A DNA stretch of 14,670 bases, taken from contig NW_021825698.1 in NCBI RefSeq assembly GCF_006345805.1, forward strand, positions 1 to 14,670, given 5' to 3'. Both the position numbers and the translations under genes were made by a program. Below the pieces are notes generated by a model. The model made no database searches, was not told where the DNA came from, and saw only the letters and a list, made by a program, of their open reading frames with translations. Below are positions 1-14,570 of this stretch, piece after piece; positions within the stretch are counted from its first letter, which is position 1; every line of letters begins with the position of its first letter. The stretch comes from Octopus sinensis. Taxonomy: Eukaryota.

Positions 1-870
1 GCCTGTATCACGCTGGTTCTGCTGGAAAATTACATTAAGCGCTTGGCCCTGCTCGATATCTTTCAAAGAAAGAAAGAAGACTTTTCTTCGTATCTTTATA
101 CAAAGAGATATAAGCTTTAAATTTCAAGCACCTTTCTGTGTCATTGATTTCCAGTTAGGAAGGGTAGTAATCCCAGTTCTGAATTACTAACCTTAGCCTG
201 CAGCTCTCTGACCGGTATTCATTCATCAGTGAAGCAGTGAAGATTTTTGAAAGTTTTTGATGCATTGTTCAGGTAATGCATTATATATTGAAAAAAGAGT
301 TGACGTCAAAAATAATTCAAATATTCGTGATACTTTTATATATTTCTGATATGGCACATTTTTCGACGCGATTACTTGTCAATAACAAACCTGCAGTTTG
401 TATCAGACAGTCGCCAATGTACAATAAAATTTATTGAGTAAAGAATGCATGTGAATGAATGCAGAGGAAGCAAATATAAAACTCCTGCGCAATCGAACAA
501 AGATATTTATTTAAAGAAAAAAAAAACGTCTGACTACAAGCAACAAATAAAATGCTAATGTTAACAAATTGAATAAATACACAAATAAAATAATAGCAAA
601 TGCTTACAAACTGTTACTGTAGTGAATGAAAATGTCTTCAATGAAATATCTAAGAGTTCAGATTGTTGGAATGTTGAGAGTAAAAGCAATGCACAAAAAT
701 AAAATAGCGGGTAAATGACCTTGTTAACAAAGAATGCATAGGTTTAAAAATGTGTATGGTATGTTTGCAAGAAACTATCTGATCAGTGGAGGCGTTACGT
801 CGTATGACCTGAGTTGCTAGTTAAGCAGATATACGAGAGAACAATGCTATCAACAATGAAGGTAAGTTTA

Positions 871-982
871 GGCGACAAACTGGCTGAATTGTTAAGTACG
901 CCAGGCAAAATACACATTTTGAGTTCAAATTCCACCGAGGCCAACTTTGGCTTTAGTCCTTTCAGAATCGATAAAATAAATA
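871..982 (+). mobile_element. SINE family B fragment (tRNA-like head plus Meta/MESC-like central domain), internally deleted and 3'-truncated
   Basis: A-box-like TGGCTGAATTG (881-891), B-box-like GAGTTCAAAT (921-930), then TCCACCGAGGCCAACTTTGGCTTTAGTCCTTTCAGAATCGATAAAATAAA, colinear with the copy at 2903-2960. The domain name comes from memory of MetaSINE-type sequences. Confidence 0.7.
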
Positions 983-986
983 GCAA

Positions 987-1149
987 GGCGCAGGAGTGGC
1001 TGTGTGGTAAGTAGCTTGTTTACCAACCACATGGTTCCGGGTTCAGTCCCACTGCGTGGCATCTTGGGCAAGTGTCTTCTGCTATAGCCCCGGGCCGACC
1101 AATGCCTTGTGAGTGGATTTGGTAGACGGAAACTGAAAGAAGCCTGTCG

Positions 1150-1194
<45 letters not shown>

Positions 1195-1399
1195 TTGTGT
1201 GTCTGTGTTTGTCCCCCTAGCATTGCTTGACAACCGATACTGGTGTGTTTACGTCGCCGTTACTTAGCGGTTCGGCAAAAGAGACCGATAGAATAAGTAC
1301 TTGGCTTACAAAAAGAATAAGTCCTGGGCTCGATTTGTTCGACTGTAGGCGGTGCTCCAGCATGGCCGCAGTCAAATGATTGAAACAAGTAAAAGAATA
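987..1399 (+). mobile_element. SINE family A copy 1 (tRNA-derived, CORE-like, bipartite with internal TA/TG microsatellite; resembles octopus OR-type SINEs)
   Basis: Head GGCGCAGGAGTGGCTGTGTGG (A box) and GGTTCAGTCCC (B box), CORE-like CTTGGGCAAGTGTCTT, internal microsatellite ~1150-1200, 3' half ending CCAGCATGGCCGCAGTCAAATGATTGAAACAAGTAAAAGA. Near-identical to 3070-3475, 5010-5398 and 12992-13432. Confidence 0.92.
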
Positions 1400-1989
1400 C
1401 GTATGAATATTCGATTTTTCCAATTGGAGATAATGTTGCAAAAACTTTACATAATGAAAGTTGTTAATGAGAGTGTGAGGATGTAAAGAAAGATGCCAAA
1501 AGAAAGGATAATAAGCTTATATTTATCGGTCCGAAGGTGCTATGCAACGTTGATTACTTTTCATATGTACAATACATTGAAGTTAATGATTCACTCGTTA
1601 TTCTACATTATGTTATTTTCAACAATAAATGCGCTATCTAATTCCACACAAATTATGCACGTATATGTAACTTCAAAAGAATTGTTCGGGTCTCTTATAA
1701 ATGTTGCGACGCACTGTGAAAAATGAAAAATGAGTTGTTTATTTTGGAGCTTTTTCTAAGTACGGCAATATAATTTACGAGCAAAACCCCGCCCCCGTCC
1801 AATGGACGGTGCTGGGTTGTCAAACATTTAAACCAAATTTTCTCAAAATTACTTGTCCGACACTCTCTCTTTGAGAAACACTGATTTAACCTAAATTTGA
1901 GACACCAGCAAAAGAAGAAATAAAGATAGACTTTTTTCTATTCCAAGAAAAACGATTTTACAAATGCACGTTCCCACGGCTTTATCGAT

Positions 1990-2160
1990 CGCATTCTCAC
2001 CTGGAATCAATTTTTGTAATTTTTTCAAGACTTATACACGCCTTGATACCGTCGGTATCTACATATCAAATTTGAGCGCAATCGGATGGAGGATGCCCGA
2101 GATCCCAGAAGACACACACACACACACACACACACACAGAACGGATTTTATATAATAGAT
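1990..2160 (+). mobile_element. 3' part of a non-autonomous Helitron-like (DINE-1/Lep1/HINE-type) element; 5' end not located
   Basis: CAAATTTGAGCGCAATCGGATG...(CA)n...CAGAACGGATTTTATATAATAGAT, the same 3' architecture as 7022-7830 and 7901-8282; small hairpin GATACC-GTC-GGTATC. Confidence 0.55.
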
Positions 2161-2288
2161 AATACCAATGAAATACCAATGAAATATTTATTTTGTTTTA
2201 ATACAACAGTGTTATATATAGATACATAGAGCGTTTGGCATCTATGCTTAAAAATGCATGCGTGCAGTGCAATAAGTAAATAGAATGA

Positions 2289-2356
<68 letters not shown>

Positions 2357-2383
2357 CAGTAGTAGTAGTAGTAGTAGTAGTAG
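2289..2383. repeat. Compound trinucleotide microsatellite (GCA)n(GTA)n
   Basis: Read directly; it produces the poly-L and poly-T/A ORF artefacts. Confidence 0.97.
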
Positions 2384-2902
2384 GGCGGCATGCATTGCAA
2401 CAGTGCGTTGCTGCCCCCATTGCTTGTTGATGATTCCCCACTCTTGACGGATGACACCTTTTGCACAACTCAGGCGACGACCGTCTAATCCATGGGTGTA
2501 CTTGAATAGTCGCTGCTGGAGGGGATTAGATTTTACGAGGTCGGACTGCAAATCCTAGTTCAGCCTCTTTTATTCGCCTTTTAGGACCGGCAGATCAAAC
2601 GTTGGGTCTGTTCTTTGACATGCTGGCCCCCCACAAAGCAGCGCAAGTTAACTCTCAGTAAGCTAAATATAAAAGGTAATATTTGCAACGTACTGGAATA
2701 GAGGAAATAGAATAATTAATAGTGGAATAAGTATACATACTAATACATTTAGCGTATCAAATATATATCATAGCATACTATATATAAATATATTAATTAG
2801 ATTTATTAATGAGAATAAGGAGAAAATATACATATAGAGGGGGACAACTTCAACAATATGAAAGGGTTGGGTGTTACAAATCTCTCTCTCTATATATATA
2901 TA

Positions 2903-3058
2903 GTTCAAATTCCGCCGAGGTCGACTTTGCCTTTCATCCTTTCGGGGTCGATTAAATAAGTACCAGTTACACATTGGGGTCGATGTAATAGACTTAATCC
3001 GTTTGTCTGTCCTTGTTTGTCCCCTCTGTGTTTAGCCCCTTGTGGGTAGTAAAGAAAT
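2903..3058 (+). mobile_element. SINE family B copy, 5'-truncated, 3' end intact
   Basis: GTTCAAATTCCGCCGAGGTCGACTTTGCCTTTCATCCTTTCGGGGTCGATTAAATAAGTACCAG...GGGGTCGATG...GTGGGTAGTAAAGAAA; homologous to 921-982; flanked by (TA)n on both sides. Confidence 0.8.
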
Positions 3059-3069
3059 ATATATATATA

Positions 3070-3475
3070 GGCGTAGGAGTGGGTGTGTGGTAAGTAGCTT
3101 GCTTACCAACCACATGGTTCCGGGTTCAGTCCCACTGCGTGGCACCTGGGGCAAGTTTTTCTACTATAGCCTAGGGCCGACTAGTGCCTTGTGAGTGGAT
3201 TTGGTAGACGGAAACTGAAAGAAGCCCGTCGTATATATGTATATATATATACATATGTGCGTGTGTGTCTGTGTTTGTCCCCCTAGCATTGCTTGACAAC
3301 CGATGCTGGTGTGTTTATGTCCCCGTAACTTAGCGGTTCGGCAAAAGAGACCGATAGAATAAGTACTGGGCTTACAAAGAATAAGTCCCGGGGTCGAGTT
3401 GCTCGATTAGAGGTGGTGCTCCAGCATGGCCGCAGTCAAATGACTGAAACAAGTAAAAGAGTAAAAGGAAAAGAG
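3070..3475 (+). mobile_element. SINE family A copy 2, full length
   Basis: Colinear with copy 1; tail GAAACAAGTAAAAGAGTAAAAGGAAAAGAG; (TA)n on both flanks. Confidence 0.93.
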
Positions 3476-3918
3476 TATATATATATCACTACATTAGAGC
3501 TTTTTAGCTCTTATTTCTAATATAAGCGTTCTGACACCCTAGTCATATTTAGCGAGAATTATAGTTTTCCACGGCTGTCTATATTAATTATTTATATATA
3601 TATATATATATAATATATAGTTTCGAAAATTGAAAGAGAAGCAAGACACGGGAACAAACGGAAAATACACACACAAGATACAGGCGAGCTCATACCTCGA
3701 CAGTTGCCCCAAATTCCCTTACAATTTCACGCCTTTCTATACATATACACAAACATACACGCAGCGTATTATATATGCTGATAGATTGGCTTTCTTTATT
3801 AAATAGAGGAGTAAAGTAAGTTAATGCTGGAGTATTTATTAGGAAGAGTTAGATAAATAAATAAAAATGTACACGTGAAGTCCTCAATTATTGCTAGACA
3901 TGTTACGATCAAAATTGA

Positions 3919-4122
3919 ATAATCAATCAGAATCTTGTTTTTAACTTTCAATGCCGTGCATACCATAAGGTCTGCAAATTTAACGAAGGCCTCAAAAGAC
4001 ATTTTAAGATCCACAAAGATCAGAACTTACCTGAGGCTCTTGGTGGCCCAAATCAAATATGCAATATATGTGGGTGTCCCCGCGGAGTTGATCCCTCGCA
4101 AAGACATCGGAGAATCATTTGA
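3919..4122 (+). pseudogene. Degenerate C2H2 zinc-finger ORF remnant, probably the C-terminus of an RTE-like non-LTR retrotransposon ORF
   Basis: Frame +1 (no start codon, so absent from the ORF track) reads IINQNLVFNFQCRAYHKVCKFNEGLKRHFKIHKDQNLPEALGGPNQICNICGCPRGVDPSQRHRRII*. This gives C-x2-(Y; TAC is one change from TGC)-x3-C-x5-L-x2-H-x3-H, followed by a second CxxC. Upstream in-frame stops at 3916 and 3895. A short 3' UTR ends in (TA)5 at 4170-4179. No TGEKP linker. Confidence 0.55.
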
Positions 4123-4179
4123 GCGTTACTGTTTTCTCTACAGAGAATCTATGAATCTCATCTGTTGACTATATATATA

Positions 4180-4406
4180 AGTAGTTGAATGAATTATCTT
4201 ATTATGGATAATTATCGCTATGGGCTCCGTGTGGGCAGTCACCTTAAAGTTTTTGTTCATCTTGATGCTGACATAAGTTCCTTTTTTTCCTGATGAGAAG
4301 GCGGCATAATGCACCCCTTATTCCTTCGAAATTAGGAATATGCAGCCTTCGAAACATATGTCGAGAATAAGGAATTTTGTTAATTCGTCGTTCACTCCAT
4401 TCTTTC

Positions 4407-4413
<7 letters not shown>
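4180..4413 (+). mobile_element. ~234-bp hammerhead-containing element (solo retrozyme or PLE pseudo-LTR-like) inserted in (TA)n
   Basis: Unique-sequence block bounded by (TA)5 (4170-4179) and (TA)33 (4414-4479), containing a complete type I hammerhead motif. Boundaries are inferred from the TA flanks only. Confidence 0.6.
4275..4377 (+). ncRNA. Minimal type I hammerhead ribozyme
   Basis: Stem I: AAGTTCCTTTTTTTC (4275-4289) with GAGAATAAGGAATTT (4363-4377), 14 of 15 positions paired (2 G-U, 1 U-U). Core CTGATGA at 4290-4296. Stem II: GAAGGC (4297-4302) with GCCTTC (4345-4350). GAAA at 4351-4354. Stem III: C4355-G4360 closing the palindromic loop ATAT. Cleavage triplet GTC, with scission predicted after 4362. 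Confidence 0.88.

Positions 4414-4479
<66 letters not shown>
4414..4479. repeat. (TA)33 microsatellite
   Basis: Read directly. Confidence 0.98.
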
Positions 4480-4480
<1 letters not shown>

Positions 4481-4483
4481 CAC

Positions 4484-4940
4484 AGGGTAAAATTAATTAA
4501 TTAAGAAGTAATCATAATCTCATCAAGCAGAATTCGCATGAAAAAGACCATTTCATGGTAAGCTTAAGTAATACTTTATAAATAGGGTTCAGCAACGATT
4601 TGCTTCACCACATACCGAATTTTAGAAATAGCAGTCAAAAAATCTTAGCTATTCCTTCTACTTTAAAAGGGGATCCCAGAAAAACCAAAGTACTTGAAAA
4701 CAATCCACGCAGGCAAAAGGGAAAAATAACGAAAATCATTCTATATTAGGTTACCCACGTATGCGCGTTTCGGAATTAGATCGGTATAAAGCATAAATAA
4801 TAAATAATTATACCATACCCGACCATTTTCGGCTCTTCCTTTTAAAGTAGAAGGAATAGCTAAGATTTTTTTGACTGCTATTTCTAAAATTCGGTATGTG
4901 GTGAAGCAAATCGTTGCTGAACCCTATTTATAAGTGTATT
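4484..4940 (-). mobile_element. Fold-back element 1 (PLE pseudo-LTR-like, with inverted partial copy)
   Basis: Inverted arms ~4570-4670 and 4838-4940, identical over the core ~95 bp except a 1-nt indel in an A-run. Spacer of 167 bp. Unpaired ~86-bp extension 4484-4569 starting AGGGTAAAATTAATTAATT. Homologous to 8652-8923. (TA)n on both sides. Confidence 0.7.
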
Positions 4941-5009
4941 ATATATATATATATTATATATATATATATAATATTTTATTATATATATTATATATATATA
5001 TATATATGC

Positions 5010-5398
5010 TTTACTTGTTTCAGTCATTTGACTGCGGCCATGCTGGAGCAACCGCCTTTAGTCGAGCAAATCGACCCCGGGACTTATTCTTTGTAAAACC
5101 CCGTACTTATTCTATCGGTCTTTTTGCCGAACCGCTAAGTAACCGGGACATAAACACACCAGCATCGTTTGTCAAGCAATGCTAGGGGACAAACACAGAC
5201 ACACAACACACACATGTATATATACATATATACGACAGGCTTCTTTCAGTTTTCCATCTACCAATCCAACCACTCACAAGGCTTTGGTCGGCCCGAGGCT
5301 ATAGTAGAAGACACATGCCCAAGATGCCACGTAGTGGGACTGAGCCCGGAACCATGTGGTTGGTTACAAGCTACTTACCACACAGCCACTCCTGCGCC
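5010..5398 (-). mobile_element. SINE family A copy 3
   Basis: Reverse complement of copies 1 and 2 from TTACTTGTTTCAGTCATTTGAC to CCACTCCTGCGCC; embedded in TA-rich tracts (4941-5007, 5399-5750). Confidence 0.93.
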
Positions 5399-5487
5399 TA
5401 TATATATATGTTTTATATATAATATTATATTTATATTTTATATATATATGTATAATATACATATATATATATGTTTGTATATATATG

Positions 5488-5520
<33 letters not shown>

Positions 5521-5669
5521 AATATATATATGTTTGTATATATATGTATATACATATATTATATAATATATATAAATATATATATATATATGTTTGTAAT
5601 ATATATATATGTAATAATATATATATTATATATAATAGTATATTATATATACTATATATATATATATCT

Positions 5670-5700
<31 letters not shown>

Positions 5701-5750
5701 AATACATATACCCGCCCCTCATATATACATATATATATATATACATATCT
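5399..5750. repeat. Degenerate (TA)n/AT-rich low-complexity tract
   Basis: Read directly; source of the YI-rich ORF artefacts. Confidence 0.95.
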
Positions 5751-6190
5751 TTACTCACACAAAGACACATAATTTCTTCCTGGTTCTCACACTCATTCAT
5801 TTTCCCTAACAATAACGAAACCGGCAAACCCAGGTGTGAGCGAGCGAGGTGTAACACTAGATCGAACATCCCTTCCACGTTACATTGTGTTTAAGCTTTA
5901 AAAAAAAAAGAAAAAACTCCGACATAATAATAAACATACAAAACATTGGAAAGAACGTTTCCACTGTACAGTGCACCTTACTGTCTCTTTCTCTCTTTCT
6001 CTCTTTACTCTTTCATGTATTCATAGTCAATTAAACTGAAGTTATGTAACAAGGGGAGCGGTGCGTGTGTTCGCGGGAAAAAAATACTATTGTCAAGAAA
6101 ATCTGCCAGAATACATGCATATATAATGAATGTGTAGGCACTGAAAGGTAGAACACCTGTATACGATCCACTTATGCACGTATATATATC

Positions 6191-6232
<42 letters not shown>

Positions 6233-6254
6233 TATAAATATATATATAATATAT

Positions 6255-6586
6255 ATTTAAATTTAATAAGGGTAGAAATGATATTAATCAATTAAAACCA
6301 GTGGCCTAGCATATTAAAACAATCCGAAGATTAAGAATATATTTTACATACAAAATTTAAAGGACTGACCACTAAAAGTGGACGGTCAACATGCTAGATA
6401 TAGACGTCAAATCGCTATTTTCCACAGCGATTTGACGTCTATATCTAGCATGTTGACCGTCCACTTTTAGTGGTCAGTCCTTTAAATTTTGTATGTAAAA
6501 TATTTTAATCTTCGGATTTTTTTAATATGCTAGGCCACTGGTTTTAATTGATTAATATCAATTTCTACCCTTATTAAATTTTAAAT
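6255..6586. mobile_element. Fold-back element 2 (near-perfect ~330-bp palindrome; diverged relative of elements 1 and 3)
   Basis: Arms ~6255-6416 and 6426-6586 with 9-nt loop ATTTTCCAC. The inner ~78 bp are perfect; the outer part has one substitution and a few small indels. Both ends carry AAGGGTAGAAAT; flanked by (TA)n. Confidence 0.75.
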
Positions 6587-6623
6587 GTATATATATATAT
6601 ATATGTATACATATATATATATG

Positions 6624-6674
<51 letters not shown>

Positions 6675-6675
<1 letters not shown>

Positions 6676-6856
6676 GCAACCACCGTATAACTGGTGTTGA
6701 TGTGTTTCCGTCCCCGTTATCTAATGGTTCAGCAAAAGACTTCGATAAAATAAGTACTACCTTAAAAAAAAAGTACCAGTCGACTAAAAAGTCTTCAGAG
6801 CAGTACCCCAGCATGGTCGAAGTCTAATGACTGAAACAAGTAAAAGATAAAAGATA
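6675..6856 (+). mobile_element. Diverged, 5'-truncated SINE family A-related 3' half
   Basis: GTCCCCGTTATCTAATGGTTCAGCAAAAG..CGATAAAATAAGTAC..CCAGCATGG..TGACTGAAACAAGTAAAAGATAAAAGATA matches the 3' half of family A and follows (TG)n. Confidence 0.75.
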
Positions 6857-7021
6857 GATTATATGTATACATGATAACATTATATAGACAAGATGGTTAC
6901 GTGAGAGCATATGCATGTATGTATGCATAAATATTATGTTAATAGATAACTTTTGAGGGATTTAGAATAATTAATGCTGCTGGAGATTAACAATATAAAT
7001 TATATATATATATATATATAT

Positions 7022-7830
7022 ACTAGCAGCATAGCCCGGCGTTGCCCGGGTATGTAAGAGCCCCTAGTAGGCAACGACTAATCCCAATCTAGTCCTTTCC
7101 CTCTAGGGAACGAAGGCGCATGTGTAGGTTGCAATGTCTTCTCTTCACTCCCAAATAACTATCAAACAGCTATCGATAATTCAACCCAGCCAATTCCTAC
7201 CAGGAAGAAATTACATTCGAGACTTTACCCCCAACACCGTCACTTCTGCTAATAGCTGCTGCAGCCGCAAGTTATTCGAATACTGTTTTTGTTTACACTT
7301 TCTTTATAACTACCACCCCAAACGTTTTACCTTAAATTTTTGACGTACCCTAAGGGTCCTCGGACGCTACTTGCAAACTCTTGGTTTATTATAAACCGCT
7401 TTTGTCGTGTGCACCAAAAAACCTTTTCCATTCGTTTGTTCAGTTTTGTCACTTTTGACTTTTTCGTTGTTGTCACTCACATTGCTGCCCGCTTTTTTGC
7501 CGTTTTTGTACATTTTTATACATTTTGGGATAATTACCCCACGTGTTCCGAGAGTTAAAAAGGTCGAGTTGCGTCCCCTAGACAGTCTGTAGAAAATGTG
7601 TTGCATATAAAAAGCTTAGATTCTCGAGCCATGTCGAATTTATCGATTTTGTTTCAGAACTGGGGGAACTTTTCAAAATTTTCGCTGCGTTAGTTTTGAA
7701 TTATGACATTGGGCTATGTGTGTGTCAAGTTCCATCAGAATCGGTTGAAAGCCGTGGTCAGGGTGAGGGTACAACCTGACAGACACACAGACACACAGAC
7801 AGACAAACTGCCGTTTATATATAGAGAGAT
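7022..7830 (+). mobile_element. Non-autonomous Helitron-like element, long variant
   Basis: 5' ACTAGCAGCATAGCCCGGCGTTGCCCGGG (GC-rich subterminal motif). 3' CAAGTTCCATCAGAATCGGTTGAAAGCCGTG...GACAGACAAACTGCCGTTTATATATAGAGAGAT. Both ends are shared with 7901-8282. Confidence 0.72.
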
Positions 7831-7838
7831 ATGTATAT

Positions 7839-7883
<45 letters not shown>

Positions 7884-7900
7884 ACACACATATATATATG

Positions 7901-8282
7901 ACTAGCAGTATCGCCCGGCGTTGCTCAGGTTTGTAAGGGAAATAACTATAAAGCATTTTTAGAGAGTTATAGCCAAAAAACAGCAAAAAAATGGAAAAAA
8001 ATGATGGTAAATTTTTTTTTGATAGTTAAAAAGGTGGAGTTGCGTCCCCTAGACAGTCTGTGTTTGTGTTCCCTGATTCTCGACCCCATGTCGAATTTAT
8101 CGATTTTTTTCAGAACTGGGGAAACTTTTCAAAATTTTCGCTGCGTTAGTTTTGAATTATGACATTGGGCTATGTTGTGTCAAGTTCATCAGAATCGTTG
8201 AAAGCCGTGGTCAGGGTGAGGGTACAAGCAACAGACACACAGAAACACGCACAGACAAACTGCCGTTTATATAGAGAGAGAT
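7901..8282 (+). mobile_element. Non-autonomous Helitron-like element, short variant
   Basis: ACTAGCAGTATCGCCCGGCGTTGCTC start. 8026-8282 is colinear and highly similar to 7556-7830, with the same ...CAAACTGCCGTTTATATAGAGAGAGAT end. Confidence 0.72.
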
Positions 8283-8424
8283 ATACGGTATATTTATGTT
8301 TCATTCATCCCTTTCACTTCAGTCAAAATTTACTATTACTTTGTTATCGTTCTAATTAATCTCACTAACATCTTAATTTTATATCGAATACTTTTGGCTT
8401 TACATAACTGATATTTAGATGTGC

Positions 8425-8425
8425 C

Positions 8426-8482
<57 letters not shown>

Positions 8483-8545
8483 CCCCCCTACATGGCCTTG
8501 CTATTTGCTTTTGAGCCAAATTAACTAACTAACTAACTAACTAAA
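8425..8545. repeat. (CTAT)n and (CTAA)n microsatellites
   Basis: Read directly. Confidence 0.9.
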
Positions 8546-8651
8546 TATCTAGATGTGTGCGTGTTTGTGTGTGGCGTGTGTATACGTATGCATACAACTA
8601 TGTATACAAATATATGTGTATATATATGCATATATTTATCAATAATAATAT

Positions 8652-8923
8652 AGGGTGAAATTAATTAATTTGGAACAATCATTAATTTCACCAAGTAGAT
8701 TTCGGCATGTAAAAGCCCCATTCAAGGAAGGTTTAAGTAATACTAAGTAATTAAGGGTTTAGCAACGATTTGCCTCACCACACACCGAATTTAGAAATAG
8801 CAGACAAAGAGTTTTGGCTATTCTTTCTACTAGTAGAAAGAATAGCCAAAACTCTTTGTCTGCTATTTCTAAATTCGGTGTGTGGTGAGGCAAATCGTTG
8901 CTAAACCCTTAATTACTTAGTAT
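8652..8923 (-). mobile_element. Fold-back element 3 containing a perfect 184-bp zero-spacer palindrome
   Basis: 8740-8831 is the exact reverse complement of 8832-8923 (centre TTCTACT|AGTAGAA). Unpaired 88-bp extension 8652-8739 starting AGGGTGAAATTAATTAATT, colinear with 4484-4667. Possible 12-bp TSD TATGCATATATT at 8625-8636 and 8921-8932. Confidence 0.78.
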
Positions 8924-9407: not shown

Positions 9408-9497
9408 GACAGACAGACAGACGGACGGACGGATGGATGGATGGATGGATGGATGGATGGATGGATGGATGGATGAATGGATGGATGGATGGATGGA

Positions 9498-9542
<45 letters not shown>

Positions 9543-9579
9543 GGACGGACGGACGGACGGACGAATGGATGGATGGATG

Positions 9580-9632
<53 letters not shown>

Positions 9633-9658
9633 GCAGACAGACAGACAGACAGACAGAC

Positions 9659-9710
<52 letters not shown>
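9408..9710. repeat. Compound tetranucleotide array GACA/GACG/GATG/GATA
   Basis: Read directly. Confidence 0.97.
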
Positions 9711-9711
<1 letters not shown>

Positions 9712-10639
9712 TTCGTATGCCTCTGTTTGTATGTTTACATATATTTCTGTAAAGAAAACAAAAGGATTCAGCCATGTCCCAAGCGTTCGCTTGTTTCGTT
9801 AGGTTCTTTGGTTGCGAACTGATGTATTCATCTATATCAACAGATAGAACACAAAATCTTCTCTGTTTACTGAACCTTTAGACCGGGACTGTATATATAA
9901 GTATTGCATGTGTGCGTATAGCGAAGGATATAAACATCGGCAAGTAAACTGAAATACAAGAACGTATGCCTTTTTCATATTCATTTCGGGTCGATTTAGG
10001 AATTACCTCGTGTTGCTCTGGAATATCCCGTGTATCGATGTTCCTTTCCTGTTGTCGTCTATTTGCAGTTACTTACGGAGAACATAACGCATCGAACTCA
10101 GATGATTAGATTAGCTTACTAATGTAGAGGACACAGTGTTTTCTATTAGATCAAAACCATTGAAAAACATGTCCTCCATTTCGAAGGAACGTCGGAACGG
10201 ACAATAAAGCTGAAAGAAAAGCAAAACTAAATAAAAAGAAAAGGAATGTCACACATAAAATACTGTTCCATGTCTTTAATGTAAAAGAAAAGAATGAAGG
10301 AAAATAAGTGTTCTGAAGATTGTTTAGCATTCTTAGTACAAAGCATTTCCACAAAAGGAATTAATTCTGTTGTAAATAATACCCTTAATGAATATCAGCA
10401 ATGTGTTATTGCCTTCACAGCACTCTTTTTCATTGAAGTTGTTTAAACATTGCCGAGTTACGTATCAGTATAAAGCGTTATTTGCTGCCGTAGAGTTCGG
10501 ATAAAGAGTTAACGGCAATTGACTGAGATACAGACGACTGGATTATTTGAATGACTGAGAACGTAAGTGGACAGAAGGAGGTAAAATGTAGAACGAGGAA
10601 GTAAAGGGTGTGAGGAATGTTTGGCAGATAAGGTACGAT

Positions 10640-11187
10640 GAAAAGATGAAAGAAGAAGAAGAAGAAGAAGAAGAAGAAGAAGAAGAAGAAGAAGAAGAAG
10701 AAGAAGAAGAAAGGGGATGAGGAGGAGGAAGAGGAAGAGGGGAGGAGGGGAAGAAGAAGGGAGGAGGTGGAAAAGGAGGCGGGGTGAGGGAGGAAAAGGA
10801 GGAGGTGGAGGGAGGGGAAGGAAATAAGTGGAAGTGAAAAAGAAGAAAGAAAAGGAAATTAGTAGTAGTAAAAGTAGTAGTGTAGGAGGGGAGGGAGGAG
10901 GAGAAGGAGAAGAAAGAGACTGAGAAGAATGAGAAAAGAAGAAGAAGAAGAGAAGAAGAGGAAGAAGAGGAAGAGAAGAGGAAAAGAGAGGAAGAGAAGA
11001 GGAAGAAAAAGGGAGAAGAGGAAGAAGAAGAGGAAGAAGAGGAAAGAAGAAGAGAGAAGAAGAAGAGGAAGAAGAAGAAGAGGAAGAAGGAAGGAGGAAA
11101 AAAAAAAAGAAGAAGAAGAAAGAAGAAAAAGAAGAAGAGGGAAGAAGATGATGATGATGATGATGAATGATGATGATGATGATGAGA
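10640..11187. repeat. Polypurine (GAA/GAG/GGA) tract followed by (GAT)n
   Basis: Pure (GAA)n at ~10648-10711, then a purine-dominated stretch to ~11145. It explains the poly-K/R/E and poly-F/S/L ORFs. Confidence 0.95.
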
Positions 11188-11858
11188 TGATAATATCGAG
11201 AAAAACTGACAAGTAGACAGACAGATAGACAGCCAGATAGATTTATTCATTCATTCATTGATAAAAGATGTCGAAGGGCTTACTTGTAACTCCATAAATG
11301 ATAAACAGAAACCACAGTTGAGTTGTAAAATATATATTCTTAATCAAACAGACTCAAGTGAGTATTTAACTAATTCAAATTTTGTAACACGTTTGTTAAA
11401 AACGTTTTGCACTCATTCTAACGTTAATTACCACTTTCGTGAAGTCAACACTCGAATAAACGAAATTCAGGCAAGAGCATTGCGATTATACGTGTGTTTA
11501 GGTTGACAATTATTTATAGCCTGTACGTTGCGTTATTTTGTAAGTAGGCATGTCAGCAGAGAAGAGATAGGACGAATACTGCCTTAGTCGCTAATTTCTT
11601 CTGTCGTGAAAGGCGAGAATTAAAACGATTTTGAAGAGGGAAGCTCAGCTTAAGTGAGATCTGGTTGTTATTGCTTGTTTATATGTCACTCAAATATAGG
11701 ATTCTGTCAGTGTTTATGCGTATGTTGATAGTATATGTGTATATGACTTGAATACGTGTATGTGTTTAGTGGTGTGAGCGTGTGGTGGTGTGGTCCAGAA
11801 GCTGATGCACGATTTACGAATTATTCTTCTTTAGCCCCTGGTCAACTGTGATCGATTA

Positions 11859-12929: not shown

Positions 12930-13230
12930 TACGAGGAGTGGTGCGAAAAGTTCCTGACTTGAGTGAAAGAAAATATTGGAGGATCAGTTTATTCTTTTAT
13001 GCTGTTATTCTCATCTTTGTTTCAGTCATTTGACTGCGACAGGCTTGGAAGCACCGCCTTTAGTCGAACAAATCACTCAGAACTATTCTTTTGTAAGCCT
13101 AGTACTTATTCTAATATCGGTCTCTTTTGCCGAACTGCTAAGTTACGGGGACGGTACACGCCATCGGTTGTCAGCGATAGTGGGAGGGGAACAAACACAG
13201 ACACACAGACGCACACACACAAACCACAAC

Positions 13231-13270
<40 letters not shown>

Positions 13271-13600
13271 TATATATACGACGAGCTTCGTTCAGTTTCC
13301 GTCTCCTAAATCTATTCACAAGGCTTTGGTCGGCTATAGTAGAAGACACTTGCCAAGGTACCACGTAGTGGACTGAACCTAGAACCATGTGGTTGGGAAG
13401 CAAGCTGCTTACCACACAGCCACTCCTGCGCCTATAGTTAATCACAATTATATTGAACATATTTCCCTCTCAGATTCACACACTTATTGCAGCGGTGGTC
13501 CAGGTTTTCCAATCCCTGTAAAAGAACCCTTAAGGTTGGTCGTCCAACCAGGCCTTTCACGACACCTTTAAAGGCAGAAATTTTTCTGCATGCCCTCGTA
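12930..13600. mobile_element. Tc1/mariner-type MITE (~230 bp when empty) interrupted by SINE A copy 5
   Basis: Imperfect TIRs TA-CGAGGAGTGGTGCGAAAAGTTCCTGACTT (12930-12960) and AAGGCAGAAATTTTTCTGCATGCCCTCG-TA (13571-13600), with TA dinucleotides at both termini. Confidence 0.72.
12992..13432 (-). mobile_element. SINE family A copy 5
   Basis: Reverse complement of family A, ending CCACTCCTGCGCC; internal (TA)n at 13234-13278; tail somewhat decayed. Confidence 0.9.
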
Positions 13601-14498: not shown

Positions 14499-14570
14499 GT
14501 TCCAAATTTTGGCACGGGGTCACAGCCATTTTTGAGGGCAGGGTGAAATCGAGTACATCGACTCCAGTAC
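14499..14570 (-). mobile_element. Old SINE 3' fragment sharing the GGGGTCGATGTA-TCGA module with family B
   Basis: AAATCGAGTACATCGACTCCAGT is the reverse complement of a degenerate ACTGGGGTCGATGTAATCGACTT (compare 2965-2995). Confidence 0.45.

What the first reader, a model, noticed from the sequence alone, without database searches (positions are those of the whole stretch)
4180..8923. Candidate system: TA-targeting, hammerhead-associated fold-back retroelements (PLE/retrozyme-like) clustered in one locus
Seen in sequence: (i) a solo 234-bp element with an intact minimal hammerhead; (ii) three related fold-back elements sharing the terminus AGGGT(A/G)(A/G)AA..ATTAAT(T/C)AATT and the inner motif TAGA(A/T)ATAG..GTCAAA..GCTATT, each embedded in TA-rich repeats; (iii) in elements 1 and 3 the inverted arm stops at the same homologous point (ATAC) and leaves an unpaired 86-88 bp extension; (iv) the fold points in elements 2 and 3, and the arm end in element 1, lie at or within ~25 nt of the GCTATT motif; (v) element 1 has a hammerhead-like remnant cut at its junction. 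Established: Penelope-like elements carry minimal type I hammerheads in pseudo-LTRs, often have inverted partial pLTR copies with a tail extension present on only one copy, and some lineages insert in microsatellites. Inference: these are non-autonomous PLE derivatives whose insertion mechanism repeatedly creates hairpin DNA at defined positions. I do not know of this family being described in cephalopods, but I cannot check.
Basis: partly seen in the sequence, partly recalled or inferred. Interest (0 to 1): 0.85.

Follow-up and report, generated by a model that had tools for sequence, protein, structure and literature searches.

The report
Fold-back repeats in TA microsatellites, plus hammerhead
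Three short non-coding mobile-element copies, each folded back on itself into a near-perfect DNA hairpin inside TA repeats, sit beside an unrelated 234-bp element with a complete hammerhead ribozyme; the layout matches what is already described for Penelope-like retroelements, so it is probably ordinary, though family membership could not be tested here.

Summary
The solo element (4180-4413) carries a complete type I hammerhead (4278-4374); a standard descriptor finds it once and in 0 of 2000 shuffles, but Rfam does not call it. The three fold-backs are real:
- el3 has 92-nt arms, 100% complementary, with no loop.
- el2 is a near-complete palindrome with a 9-nt loop.
- el1 has about 100-nt arms around a 167-nt spacer.

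el1 and el3 are 81-84% identical. Every difference between them is mirrored in each copy's own inverted arm. Both inverted arms stop at the same ATAC, leaving an 87-88 nt one-sided extension. el2 is probably a distant relative (block-wise p about 0.01; whole-length p about 0.05).

Two claims fail. The "hammerhead remnant" in el1 is at chance level, and no fold-back contains a hammerhead or resembles the solo element. The hammerhead link is adjacency only.

The architecture is head-to-head inverted copies, a palindromic junction, a one-sided tail and AT-rich simple targets. This matches published endonuclease-containing Penelope-like elements. The best reading is therefore non-autonomous Penelope-type insertions made by self-priming or template switching. 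No reverse transcriptase or endonuclease ORF is in the window, and no cephalopod sequence was reachable, so membership is untested. Interest is modest.

The parts
4170..4179 (.). (TA)5 left flank of the solo element
   Evidence: read directly
4180..4413 (+). Solo 234-bp non-coding element carrying a hammerhead; no similarity to el1-3
   Evidence: bounded by TA runs on both sides; no BLAST or alignment similarity to the fold-backs
4278..4374 (+). Type I hammerhead ribozyme motif. Stem I 4278-4289/4363-4374; CUGAUGA 4290-4296; helix II 4297-4350; GAAA 4351-4354; 2-bp helix III with AUAU loop; predicted cleavage after C4362
   Evidence: descriptor search gives 1 hit and 0/2000 shuffles; fold; not called by Rfam
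4410..4479 (.). (TA)35 between the solo element and el1
   Evidence: TRF
4484..4570 (.). el1 one-sided extension ('tail', 87 nt), starting AGGGTAAAATTAATTAATT
   Evidence: 81% identical to 8652-8739; no inverted partner
4571..4670 (.). el1 left arm, from ATAC to ...TTCTACTTTAAAAGG
   Evidence: inverted repeat with 4838-4939
4671..4837 (.). el1 spacer (167 nt), unique in the window; contains the chance-level CGAAAATGGTC
   Evidence: no other match in the window; motif statistics
4838..4939 (.). el1 right (inverted) arm, ending ...GTAT and abutting TA-rich repeats 4940-5007
6269..6416 (.). el2 left arm, AGGGTAGAAAT ... GTCAAATCGCT
6417..6425 (.). el2 hairpin loop ATTTTCCAC (the unit ends ...GCTATTTTCCAC)
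   Evidence: read directly
6426..6571 (.). el2 right (inverted) arm. The palindrome continues about 20 nt into both flanks (6249-6268 / 6572-6590)
   Evidence: (I2, I5)
8652..8739 (.). el3 one-sided extension (88 nt), AGGGTGAAATTAATTAATT...; begins with a 39-nt near-hairpin at 8654-8692
8740..8831 (.). el3 left arm, ATAC ... TTCTACT
   Evidence: I1
8832..8923 (.). el3 right (inverted) arm, 100% complementary, zero loop, ending GTAT
   Evidence: (I1)

Best explanation
el1, el3 and probably el2 are copies of a short non-coding retroelement unit of about 180 nt, running from AGGGTRRAA to TTCYAC. It was most likely mobilised in trans by a Penelope-like element (PLE). It inserted into TA-rich simple repeats.

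Inferred mechanism: DNA synthesis reaches the inner end of the template and then turns back on the new strand, by self-priming (snap-back) or template switching. This makes a head-to-head inverted copy at each insertion. In el1 and el3 the return strand is joined to the target at a fixed TA-rich internal site (ATAC), which leaves an 87-88 nt 'tail' on one side only. In el2 the return strand ran through the whole unit and into the target flank.

The neighbouring 234-bp element is a separate hammerhead-bearing pseudo-LTR (pLTR) fragment or solo retrozyme monomer that used the same TA tract.

Shown: the anatomy, the mirrored differences, the shared end points, the TA-rich context, and an intact hammerhead motif. 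Inferred: an RNA intermediate, the PLE partner, the sense strand, and the self-priming step.
For: - Arms within a copy are 99-100% identical, while el1 and el3 differ by about 13 substitutions plus indels over the same 92 nt. All of these differences are mirrored in each copy's own inverted arm. The inverted arm is therefore remade or homogenised per copy.
- The outer arm end is the same nucleotide (ATAC) in el1 and el3, although their flanks are unrelated.
- The units end within a few nt of each other in homologous coordinates: el2 ...TTCCAC, el3 ...TTCTACT, el1 ...TTCTAC+9. This fits a turn-round at the template end.
- In el2 the palindrome extends past the AGGGT terminus into the flank (I5), as expected if copying ran back into the priming target DNA.
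- There is no TIR for the AGGGT terminus in el1 or el3.
- Seven of the eight flanks of these elements are TA-rich.
- Published PLE features match: head-to-head inverted pLTRs with palindromes at the junction, interpreted as self-priming; a tail on one inverted pLTR; AT-rich simple targets; pLTRs sufficient for mobilisation in trans (PMC3846280). Naiad PLEs prefer (TA)n and lack hammerheads (PMC8557442). PLEs are abundant and recently active in octopus (PMC13282606).
- The hammerhead in the solo element has the metazoan/PLE form, with a 2-bp helix III and a palindromic loop (PMC4209133).
Against: - There is no RT or GIY-YIG ORF and no Pfam domain in the window.
- There is no direct pLTR pair.
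- There is no hammerhead in el1-3.
- The tail is 87-88 nt, against the 30-40 nt reported.
- There are only three copies and no genome-wide data, so homology to any PLE is untested.
- Identical arms could also come from gene conversion.
- Cephalopod Naiads are reported as old remnants (PMC8557442).
- SINEs and another repeat family in the same window also abut TA repeats, so the TA context is not specific.
Confidence: 0.45

Rival explanations
1. They are MITE or foldback-type DNA transposons (for example Tc1/mariner-derived, TA-targeting, or like the rice (TA)n-targeting 'Micron'). In this reading the hairpin is the element itself and moves by cut-and-paste.
For: - el2 is an almost complete palindrome flanked by TA-rich sequence.
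- The paired cores of el1 and el3 can be read as TA|C...G|TA.
- Tc1-Mariner elements and MITEs are numerous in octopus (PMC13282606).
- Palindromic MITEs are known elsewhere (PMC5625713, frog Harbinger).
- Micron is cited from my own knowledge.
Against: - el1 and el3 carry a conserved 87-88 nt extension on one side only. It ends in the same AGGGT terminus as both ends of el2, so the mobile unit is not TIR-bounded.
- About 13 differences between copies are all mirrored between arms. This is not expected for independently decaying TIRs.
- No clear TSD can be read in el3.
Confidence: 0.2
2. They are SINE-like units mobilised by a simple-repeat-targeting non-LTR retrotransposon (such as the Dong/R4 clade, abundant in octopus). 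The same snap-back or two-strand priming artefact occurs at integration.
For: - There is a defined terminus next to a simple repeat, and the inner end varies slightly.
- Dong-R4 is the most recently active LINE group in O. vulgaris (PMC13282606).
- el3's flank next to AGGGT is (AAT)3.
- Dong's (TAA)n preference is from my own knowledge.
Against: - Head-to-head duplicated copies with a one-sided tail are described for PLEs, not for LINE-driven SINEs.
- Classical twin priming inverts a segment without duplicating it.
- There is no tRNA, 5S or other Pol III-type head.
- No LINE 3' end is available for comparison.
Confidence: 0.15
3. The fold-backs formed after insertion by DNA repair or replication. 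A break or fork stall in the hairpin-prone (TA)n next to a simple insertion led to fold-back priming and inverted duplication, and arm identity was then kept by gene conversion.
For: - The fold centres lie at the unit end, where a TA tract would have abutted. The el3 centre is ...CTAC-TA-GTAG....
- (TA)n is self-complementary.
- The el2 palindrome includes its flank.
Against: - The same unusual event would have to happen in three of three copies.
- The return arm would have to stop at the same ATAC in el1 and el3.
- No TA run remains at any fold centre.
Confidence: 0.12
4. They are assembly or sequencing artefacts: chimeric fold-back reads around TA repeats.
For: Perfect, zero-loop palindromes are typical of read chimeras and are unstable in vivo.
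Against: - There are three homologous cases with shared end points.
- Each is followed by unique downstream sequence.
- el1 has a 167-nt unique spacer, and the outer arms of el2 have diverged.
Confidence: 0.05

Closest known systems
Endonuclease-containing Penelope-like elements: inverted pseudo-LTR (pLTR) structures (Arkhipova et al. 2013, PMC3846280; Craig et al. 2021, PMC8557442)
   Same: Head-to-head inverted copies with a palindromic junction; an optional extension ('tail') on only one inverted copy; insertion in AT-rich simple sequence or (TA)n; captured unrelated DNA between pLTRs (compare the el1 spacer); no hammerhead in the Naiad clade.
   Different: No RT/GIY-YIG ORF, no direct pLTR pair and no demonstrated homology to any PLE. 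The tail is 87-88 nt rather than 30-40 nt. The whole insertion is only 270-460 bp.
Metazoan type I hammerheads in PLE pLTRs and non-LTR retrozymes (Cervera & de la Pena 2014, PMC4209133; 2020, PMC7229834; Li et al. 2026 preprint, 10.64898/2026.07.22.740005)
   Same: For the solo element: a full conserved core, the G10.1-C11.1 pair, a 2-bp helix III with a 4-nt palindromic loop (expected to act as a dimer), low GC, a size of about 230 bp, and occurrence as a 'solo' monomer.
   Different: Single copy, not a tandem array. Helix II is unusually long (6 bp plus an imperfect extension of about 36 nt). Rfam does not recognise it. Activity is untested.
Palindromic MITEs and foldback elements (for example the frog Harbinger-derived palindromic repeat, PMC5625713)
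   Same: Short, AT-rich and non-coding; able to fold into a tight hairpin. el2 is nearly fully palindromic.
   Different: el1 and el3 have an unpaired conserved terminus. The arms covary between copies. No transposase relative or TSD was shown.
L1 5' inversion by twin priming (from my own knowledge)
   Same: An inverted segment is created during target-primed reverse transcription, using both target strands.
   Different: Twin priming inverts the 5' part without duplicating it. Here the same segment is present in both orientations.

Membership tests
Penelope-like element (autonomous, or a non-autonomous derivative) | RT plus GIY-YIG endonuclease ORF, or sequence homology of the short element to the pLTR or 3' end of such an element | not testable with these tools
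   There is no ORF with a Pfam domain in the window. No cephalopod genome could be searched.
Penelope-like element (autonomous, or a non-autonomous derivative) | Direct pseudo-LTRs from partial tandem insertion | tested here: not met
   No direct repeat of the unit occurs within or beside el1-3.
Penelope-like element (autonomous, or a non-autonomous derivative) | Adjacent inverted, truncated copy (head-to-head) with a palindromic junction | tested here: met
   el3 has zero loop, el2 a 9-nt loop, and el1 a 167-nt spacer. This is the feature described in PMC3846280.
Penelope-like element (autonomous, or a non-autonomous derivative) | Short extension ('tail') on one end only | tested here: met
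   The extension is 87 nt (el1) and 88 nt (el3), homologous between the two and on one side only. It is longer than the published 30-40 nt. el2 has it on both sides.
Penelope-like element (autonomous, or a non-autonomous derivative) | Hammerhead motif in the pLTR (canonical clades; absent in Naiad/Chlamys) | tested here: not met
   There is no CUGAUGA and no descriptor hit in el1-3. The 'remnant' is at chance level. The feature is met only by the unrelated solo element.
Penelope-like element (autonomous, or a non-autonomous derivative) | Preference for AT-rich simple sequence or (TA)n targets | tested here: met
   The flanks are TA-rich. This is not specific, because SINE and other repeats in the window also abut TA runs.
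Hammerhead ribozyme, type I | Conserved core (CUGAUGA, GAAA, UH) with helices I, II and III in type I topology | tested here: met
   4278-4374, + strand; 0/2000 shuffles match the descriptor; fold.
Hammerhead ribozyme, type I | Match to the curated Rfam hammerhead covariance models | tested here: not met
   There is no hammerhead hit at E <= 1 over the window or E <= 10 over 4150-4950.
Hammerhead ribozyme, type I | Self-cleavage | not testable with these tools
   This needs in vitro transcription of monomer and dimer constructs.
Non-LTR retrozyme | Tandem repeats of about 170-400 bp monomers, each with a type I hammerhead; circular RNA | tested here: not met
   There is a single copy only. Solo monomers are reported as derivatives (10.64898/2026.07.22.740005). 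Circular RNA cannot be tested here.
MITE (TIR DNA transposon derivative) | Terminal inverted repeats at both ends of the mobile unit | tested here: not met
   The feature is met by el2. In el1 and el3 the AGGGT terminus has no inverted partner.
MITE (TIR DNA transposon derivative) | Fixed-length target-site duplication | tested here: inconclusive
   The flanks are TA-rich and partly palindromic, so a TA duplication can be neither seen nor excluded. None is evident in el3.
SINE (Pol III-derived head) | tRNA, 5S or 7SL-related 5' region | tested here: not met
   There are no tRNA genes and no Rfam match other than sub-threshold hairpin-shaped miRNA models.

The most novel reading that the evidence does not exclude
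A family of very short, hammerhead-less, non-autonomous retroelements whose integration always ends in a self-primed turn-round at the template end, with the return strand resolved at one fixed internal site. Every new copy would then be born as a perfect hairpin. This would give direct genomic footprints of the still-unproven self-priming step in Penelope-type retrotransposition. It would also point to a dedicated source of the unusually abundant near-perfect dsRNA-forming loci in octopus, which are substrates for A-to-I editing and small-RNA production.
Probability: 0.2. Interest if true: 0.6.

Novelty: new member of a known kind. Interest (0 to 1): 0.35.

Why it matters
If a genome-wide survey confirms this, these copies would be a compact natural record of how Penelope-type elements build their inverted repeats. 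That record includes the fold point at the template end, the fixed resolution site and the one-sided tail. The published literature leaves this mechanism open (PMC3846280, PMC8557442). Elements born as perfect hairpins could also help explain why octopus genomes hold so many loci that form long, near-perfect dsRNA (PMC5625713). As it stands, the locus is best seen as a transposable-element nest in a TA microsatellite, with features already described for a known class.

Tried and rejected
These were: the el1/el3 core and the window's very abundant roughly 390-bp SINE-like repeat against metagenome contigs, prokaryote genome contigs and viral contigs; a 55-aa stop-free translation of el1 against the protein collection; and an exact look-up of a window ORF.
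- Rfam gave no hammerhead call. It gave only sub-threshold miRNA-model hits on the hairpins (mir-559, 64.5 bits against a gathering score of 95, on el2; mir-5681, 48 against 88, on el3). I take these as shape artefacts of perfect hairpins.
- tRNA scan: none.
- Pfam on 10 ORFs, and on the three + frames of 1-4180 upstream of the hammerhead: nothing. There is therefore no decayed RT/EN next to the solo element on the strand of the hammerhead.
- Similarity between the solo element and the fold-backs: none, whether global, local or terminal.
- Helitron and piggyBac/PIF-type readings of the termini were rejected on reading the ends. The termini are not 5'-TC...CTRR-3'. The ends read GGG...CCC inward, not CCC...GGG. 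No direct TAA/TTA duplication is present.
- A fourth AGGGTGAAA at 14540 is unrelated sequence.

Full report
**Context.** The window is non-coding, repeat-dense eukaryotic DNA with 30-45% GC. It has many TA, CA, GATA and purine microsatellites. No ORF has a Pfam domain and there are no tRNA genes. A SINE-like repeat of about 390 bp occurs five times. I could not confirm the species.

**The hammerhead element (4180-4413).**
- It lies between (TA)5 and (TA)35.
- Read directly, it contains a complete type I hammerhead on the + strand:
  - stem I: UUCCUUUUUUUC (4278-4289) pairs with GAGAAUAAGGAA (4363-4374)
  - core: CUGAUGA (4290-4296)
  - helix II: GAAGGC/GCCUUC (4297-4302 / 4345-4350), with a long imperfect extension
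  - then GAAA (4351-4354), C, AUAU, G, U and C4362
- A descriptor requires stem I of at least 5 bp, helix II of at least 4 bp, the 15.2-16.2 pair and UH. It finds this site only, and nothing in 2000 dinucleotide shuffles of the window.
- The minimum-free-energy fold recovers stems I and II (z = -3.0).
- The 2-bp helix III with a 4-nt palindromic loop is the usual metazoan/PLE form, thought to act as a dimer (PMC4209133).
- Rfam's models do not report it, so 'intact' means intact by motif only.
- The element is single-copy in the window.
- It fits a solo retrozyme monomer or a PLE pseudo-LTR (pLTR) fragment (PMC7229834; 10.64898/2026.07.22.740005).

**The fold-backs.**
- el3 is AGGGTGAAATT... 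(8652), with 88 unpaired nt followed by a perfect 92+92 nt palindrome (8740-8831 / 8832-8923) with no loop.
- el1 is AGGGTAAAATT... (4484), with 87 unpaired nt. Its arms are 4571-4670 and 4838-4939, which differ at 2-3 positions, around a 167-nt spacer that is unique in the window.
- el2 (6269-6571) is palindromic over its whole length with a 9-nt loop (6417-6425). Its inner 81 nt are 99% paired. The outer part has 5-6 differences. The palindrome runs on about 20 nt into both flanks (I2 and I5).

**Relationships between the copies.**
- el1 and el3 are 81-84% identical along the extension and the arm, with unrelated flanks. They are therefore separate insertions.
- The roughly 13 substitutions and the indels that separate their arms are all mirrored in each copy's own inverted arm.
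- Both inverted arms end at the same ATAC (4571 and 8740).
- el2 shares four features with el1/el3 at similar offsets:
  - AGGGTRRAA at its ends (5 hits in the window against 0.53 expected)
  - ATTAATYAATT
  - an AAGNTTAAG block
  - TAGAWATAG..GNCAAA..GCTATT..TTCYAC
- Whole-length alignment of el2 to el1/el3 is only marginal (z about 2). Position-matched blocks give p of 0.007-0.05. I treat el2 as a probable distant relative.
- In homologous coordinates the three units end at ...TTCCAC (el2), ...TTCTACT (el3) and ...TTCTAC+9 (el1). The fold therefore sits at a defined unit end, not at a random truncation point.
- In el2 the drop in arm identity begins at the block homologous to the ATAC point.

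**What fails.**
- No fold-back has CUGAUGA or a descriptor hit.
- The claimed remnant, CGAAAATGGTC, is a pattern that occurs as often as chance predicts: 3 hits against 1.76 expected.
- The solo element shares no similarity with el1-3.
- The hammerhead association is therefore adjacency within one TA tract. TA-rich flanks also border a SINE copy and another repeat family here.

**Interpretation.**
- The mirrored differences mean one of two things. Either the inverted arm is made afresh at each insertion, or it is homogenised afterwards.
- Several features together match published endonuclease-containing PLE anatomy. These are a defined outer terminus, a fold at the unit's inner end, a fixed stop for the return arm, a one-sided tail, and (in el2) copying into the flank.
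- That published anatomy is as follows:
  - inverted pLTRs head-to-head with palindromes at the junction, read by those authors as self-priming
  - an optional tail on one inverted pLTR
  - AT-rich simple targets
  - pLTRs sufficient for mobilisation in trans, with captured spacers (PMC3846280)
  - a (TA)n preference and no hammerhead in Naiads (PMC8557442)
- PLEs are abundant and recently active in octopus (PMC13282606, PMC8967140).
- I therefore favour non-autonomous PLE-type insertions formed by self-priming or template switching (confidence 0.45).
- The rivals and their confidences are:
  - a palindromic MITE (0.2). The unpaired conserved terminus and the arm covariation count against it.
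  - a LINE-driven SINE with the same snap-back (0.15)
  - post-insertion fold-back repair at fragile (TA)n plus gene conversion (0.12)
  - an assembly artefact (0.05)

**Limits.**
- All attempts to reach further copies failed.
- Family membership, copy number, the autonomous partner, the sense strand and the age of the copies remain untested.
- The finding is a well-observed but probably ordinary example of a known class.
- It has one possible upside. If the fold and stop points prove constant genome-wide, they would give a natural record of the PLE self-priming step. They would also point to a source of the perfect hairpins that are unusually common in octopus (PMC5625713).

Noticed in passing
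window 986-1393 (-), 3068-3457 (-), 5008-5400 (+), 13017-13434 (+), fragment about 6808-6844 (-): There are five copies (80-89% identical) of a SINE-like repeat of about 390 bp, with an internal CA/TA microsatellite. The copy at 5008-5400 sits in the same TA tract as el1.
   Followed up: partly
window 7022-7832 and 7901-8284: Two copies of another repeat family start with ACTAGCAG(C/T)AT(A/C)GCCCGGCGTTGC directly after a TA run and end with CTGCCGTTTATATA..GAGAGATAT. The second copy lacks about 480 bp of internal sequence. The family is unclassified.
   Followed up: partly
window 6377-6465 (-), 8806-8857 (both strands): Rfam miRNA models (mir-559 at 64.5 bits, mir-5681 at 48 bits) match the centres of el2 and el3, well below their gathering scores. 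These are most likely shape matches to perfect hairpins, though such hairpins could yield small RNAs if transcribed.
   Followed up: no
window 8654-8692: The one-sided extension of el3 begins with a 39-nt near-palindrome (GGTGAAATTAAT...ATTAATTTCACC). It is less perfect in el1. PLE pLTRs with terminal palindromes of 18-38 bp are reported (PMC3846280).
   Followed up: no
window 10540-11200: There is a strongly purine-skewed low-complexity tract of (AAG)n, (GGA)n, (AGA)n and (GAT)n, with GC skew up to 0.87.
   Followed up: no
window 9432-9711 and 8425-8545: There is a long (GATA)70 array. There is also a (CTAT)14 array followed by (TAAC)n just upstream of el3.
   Followed up: no
window 14540-14548: AGGGTGAAA recurs here, but in unrelated sequence that is not next to TA repeats. 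It is a chance match to the terminus motif.
   Followed up: yes
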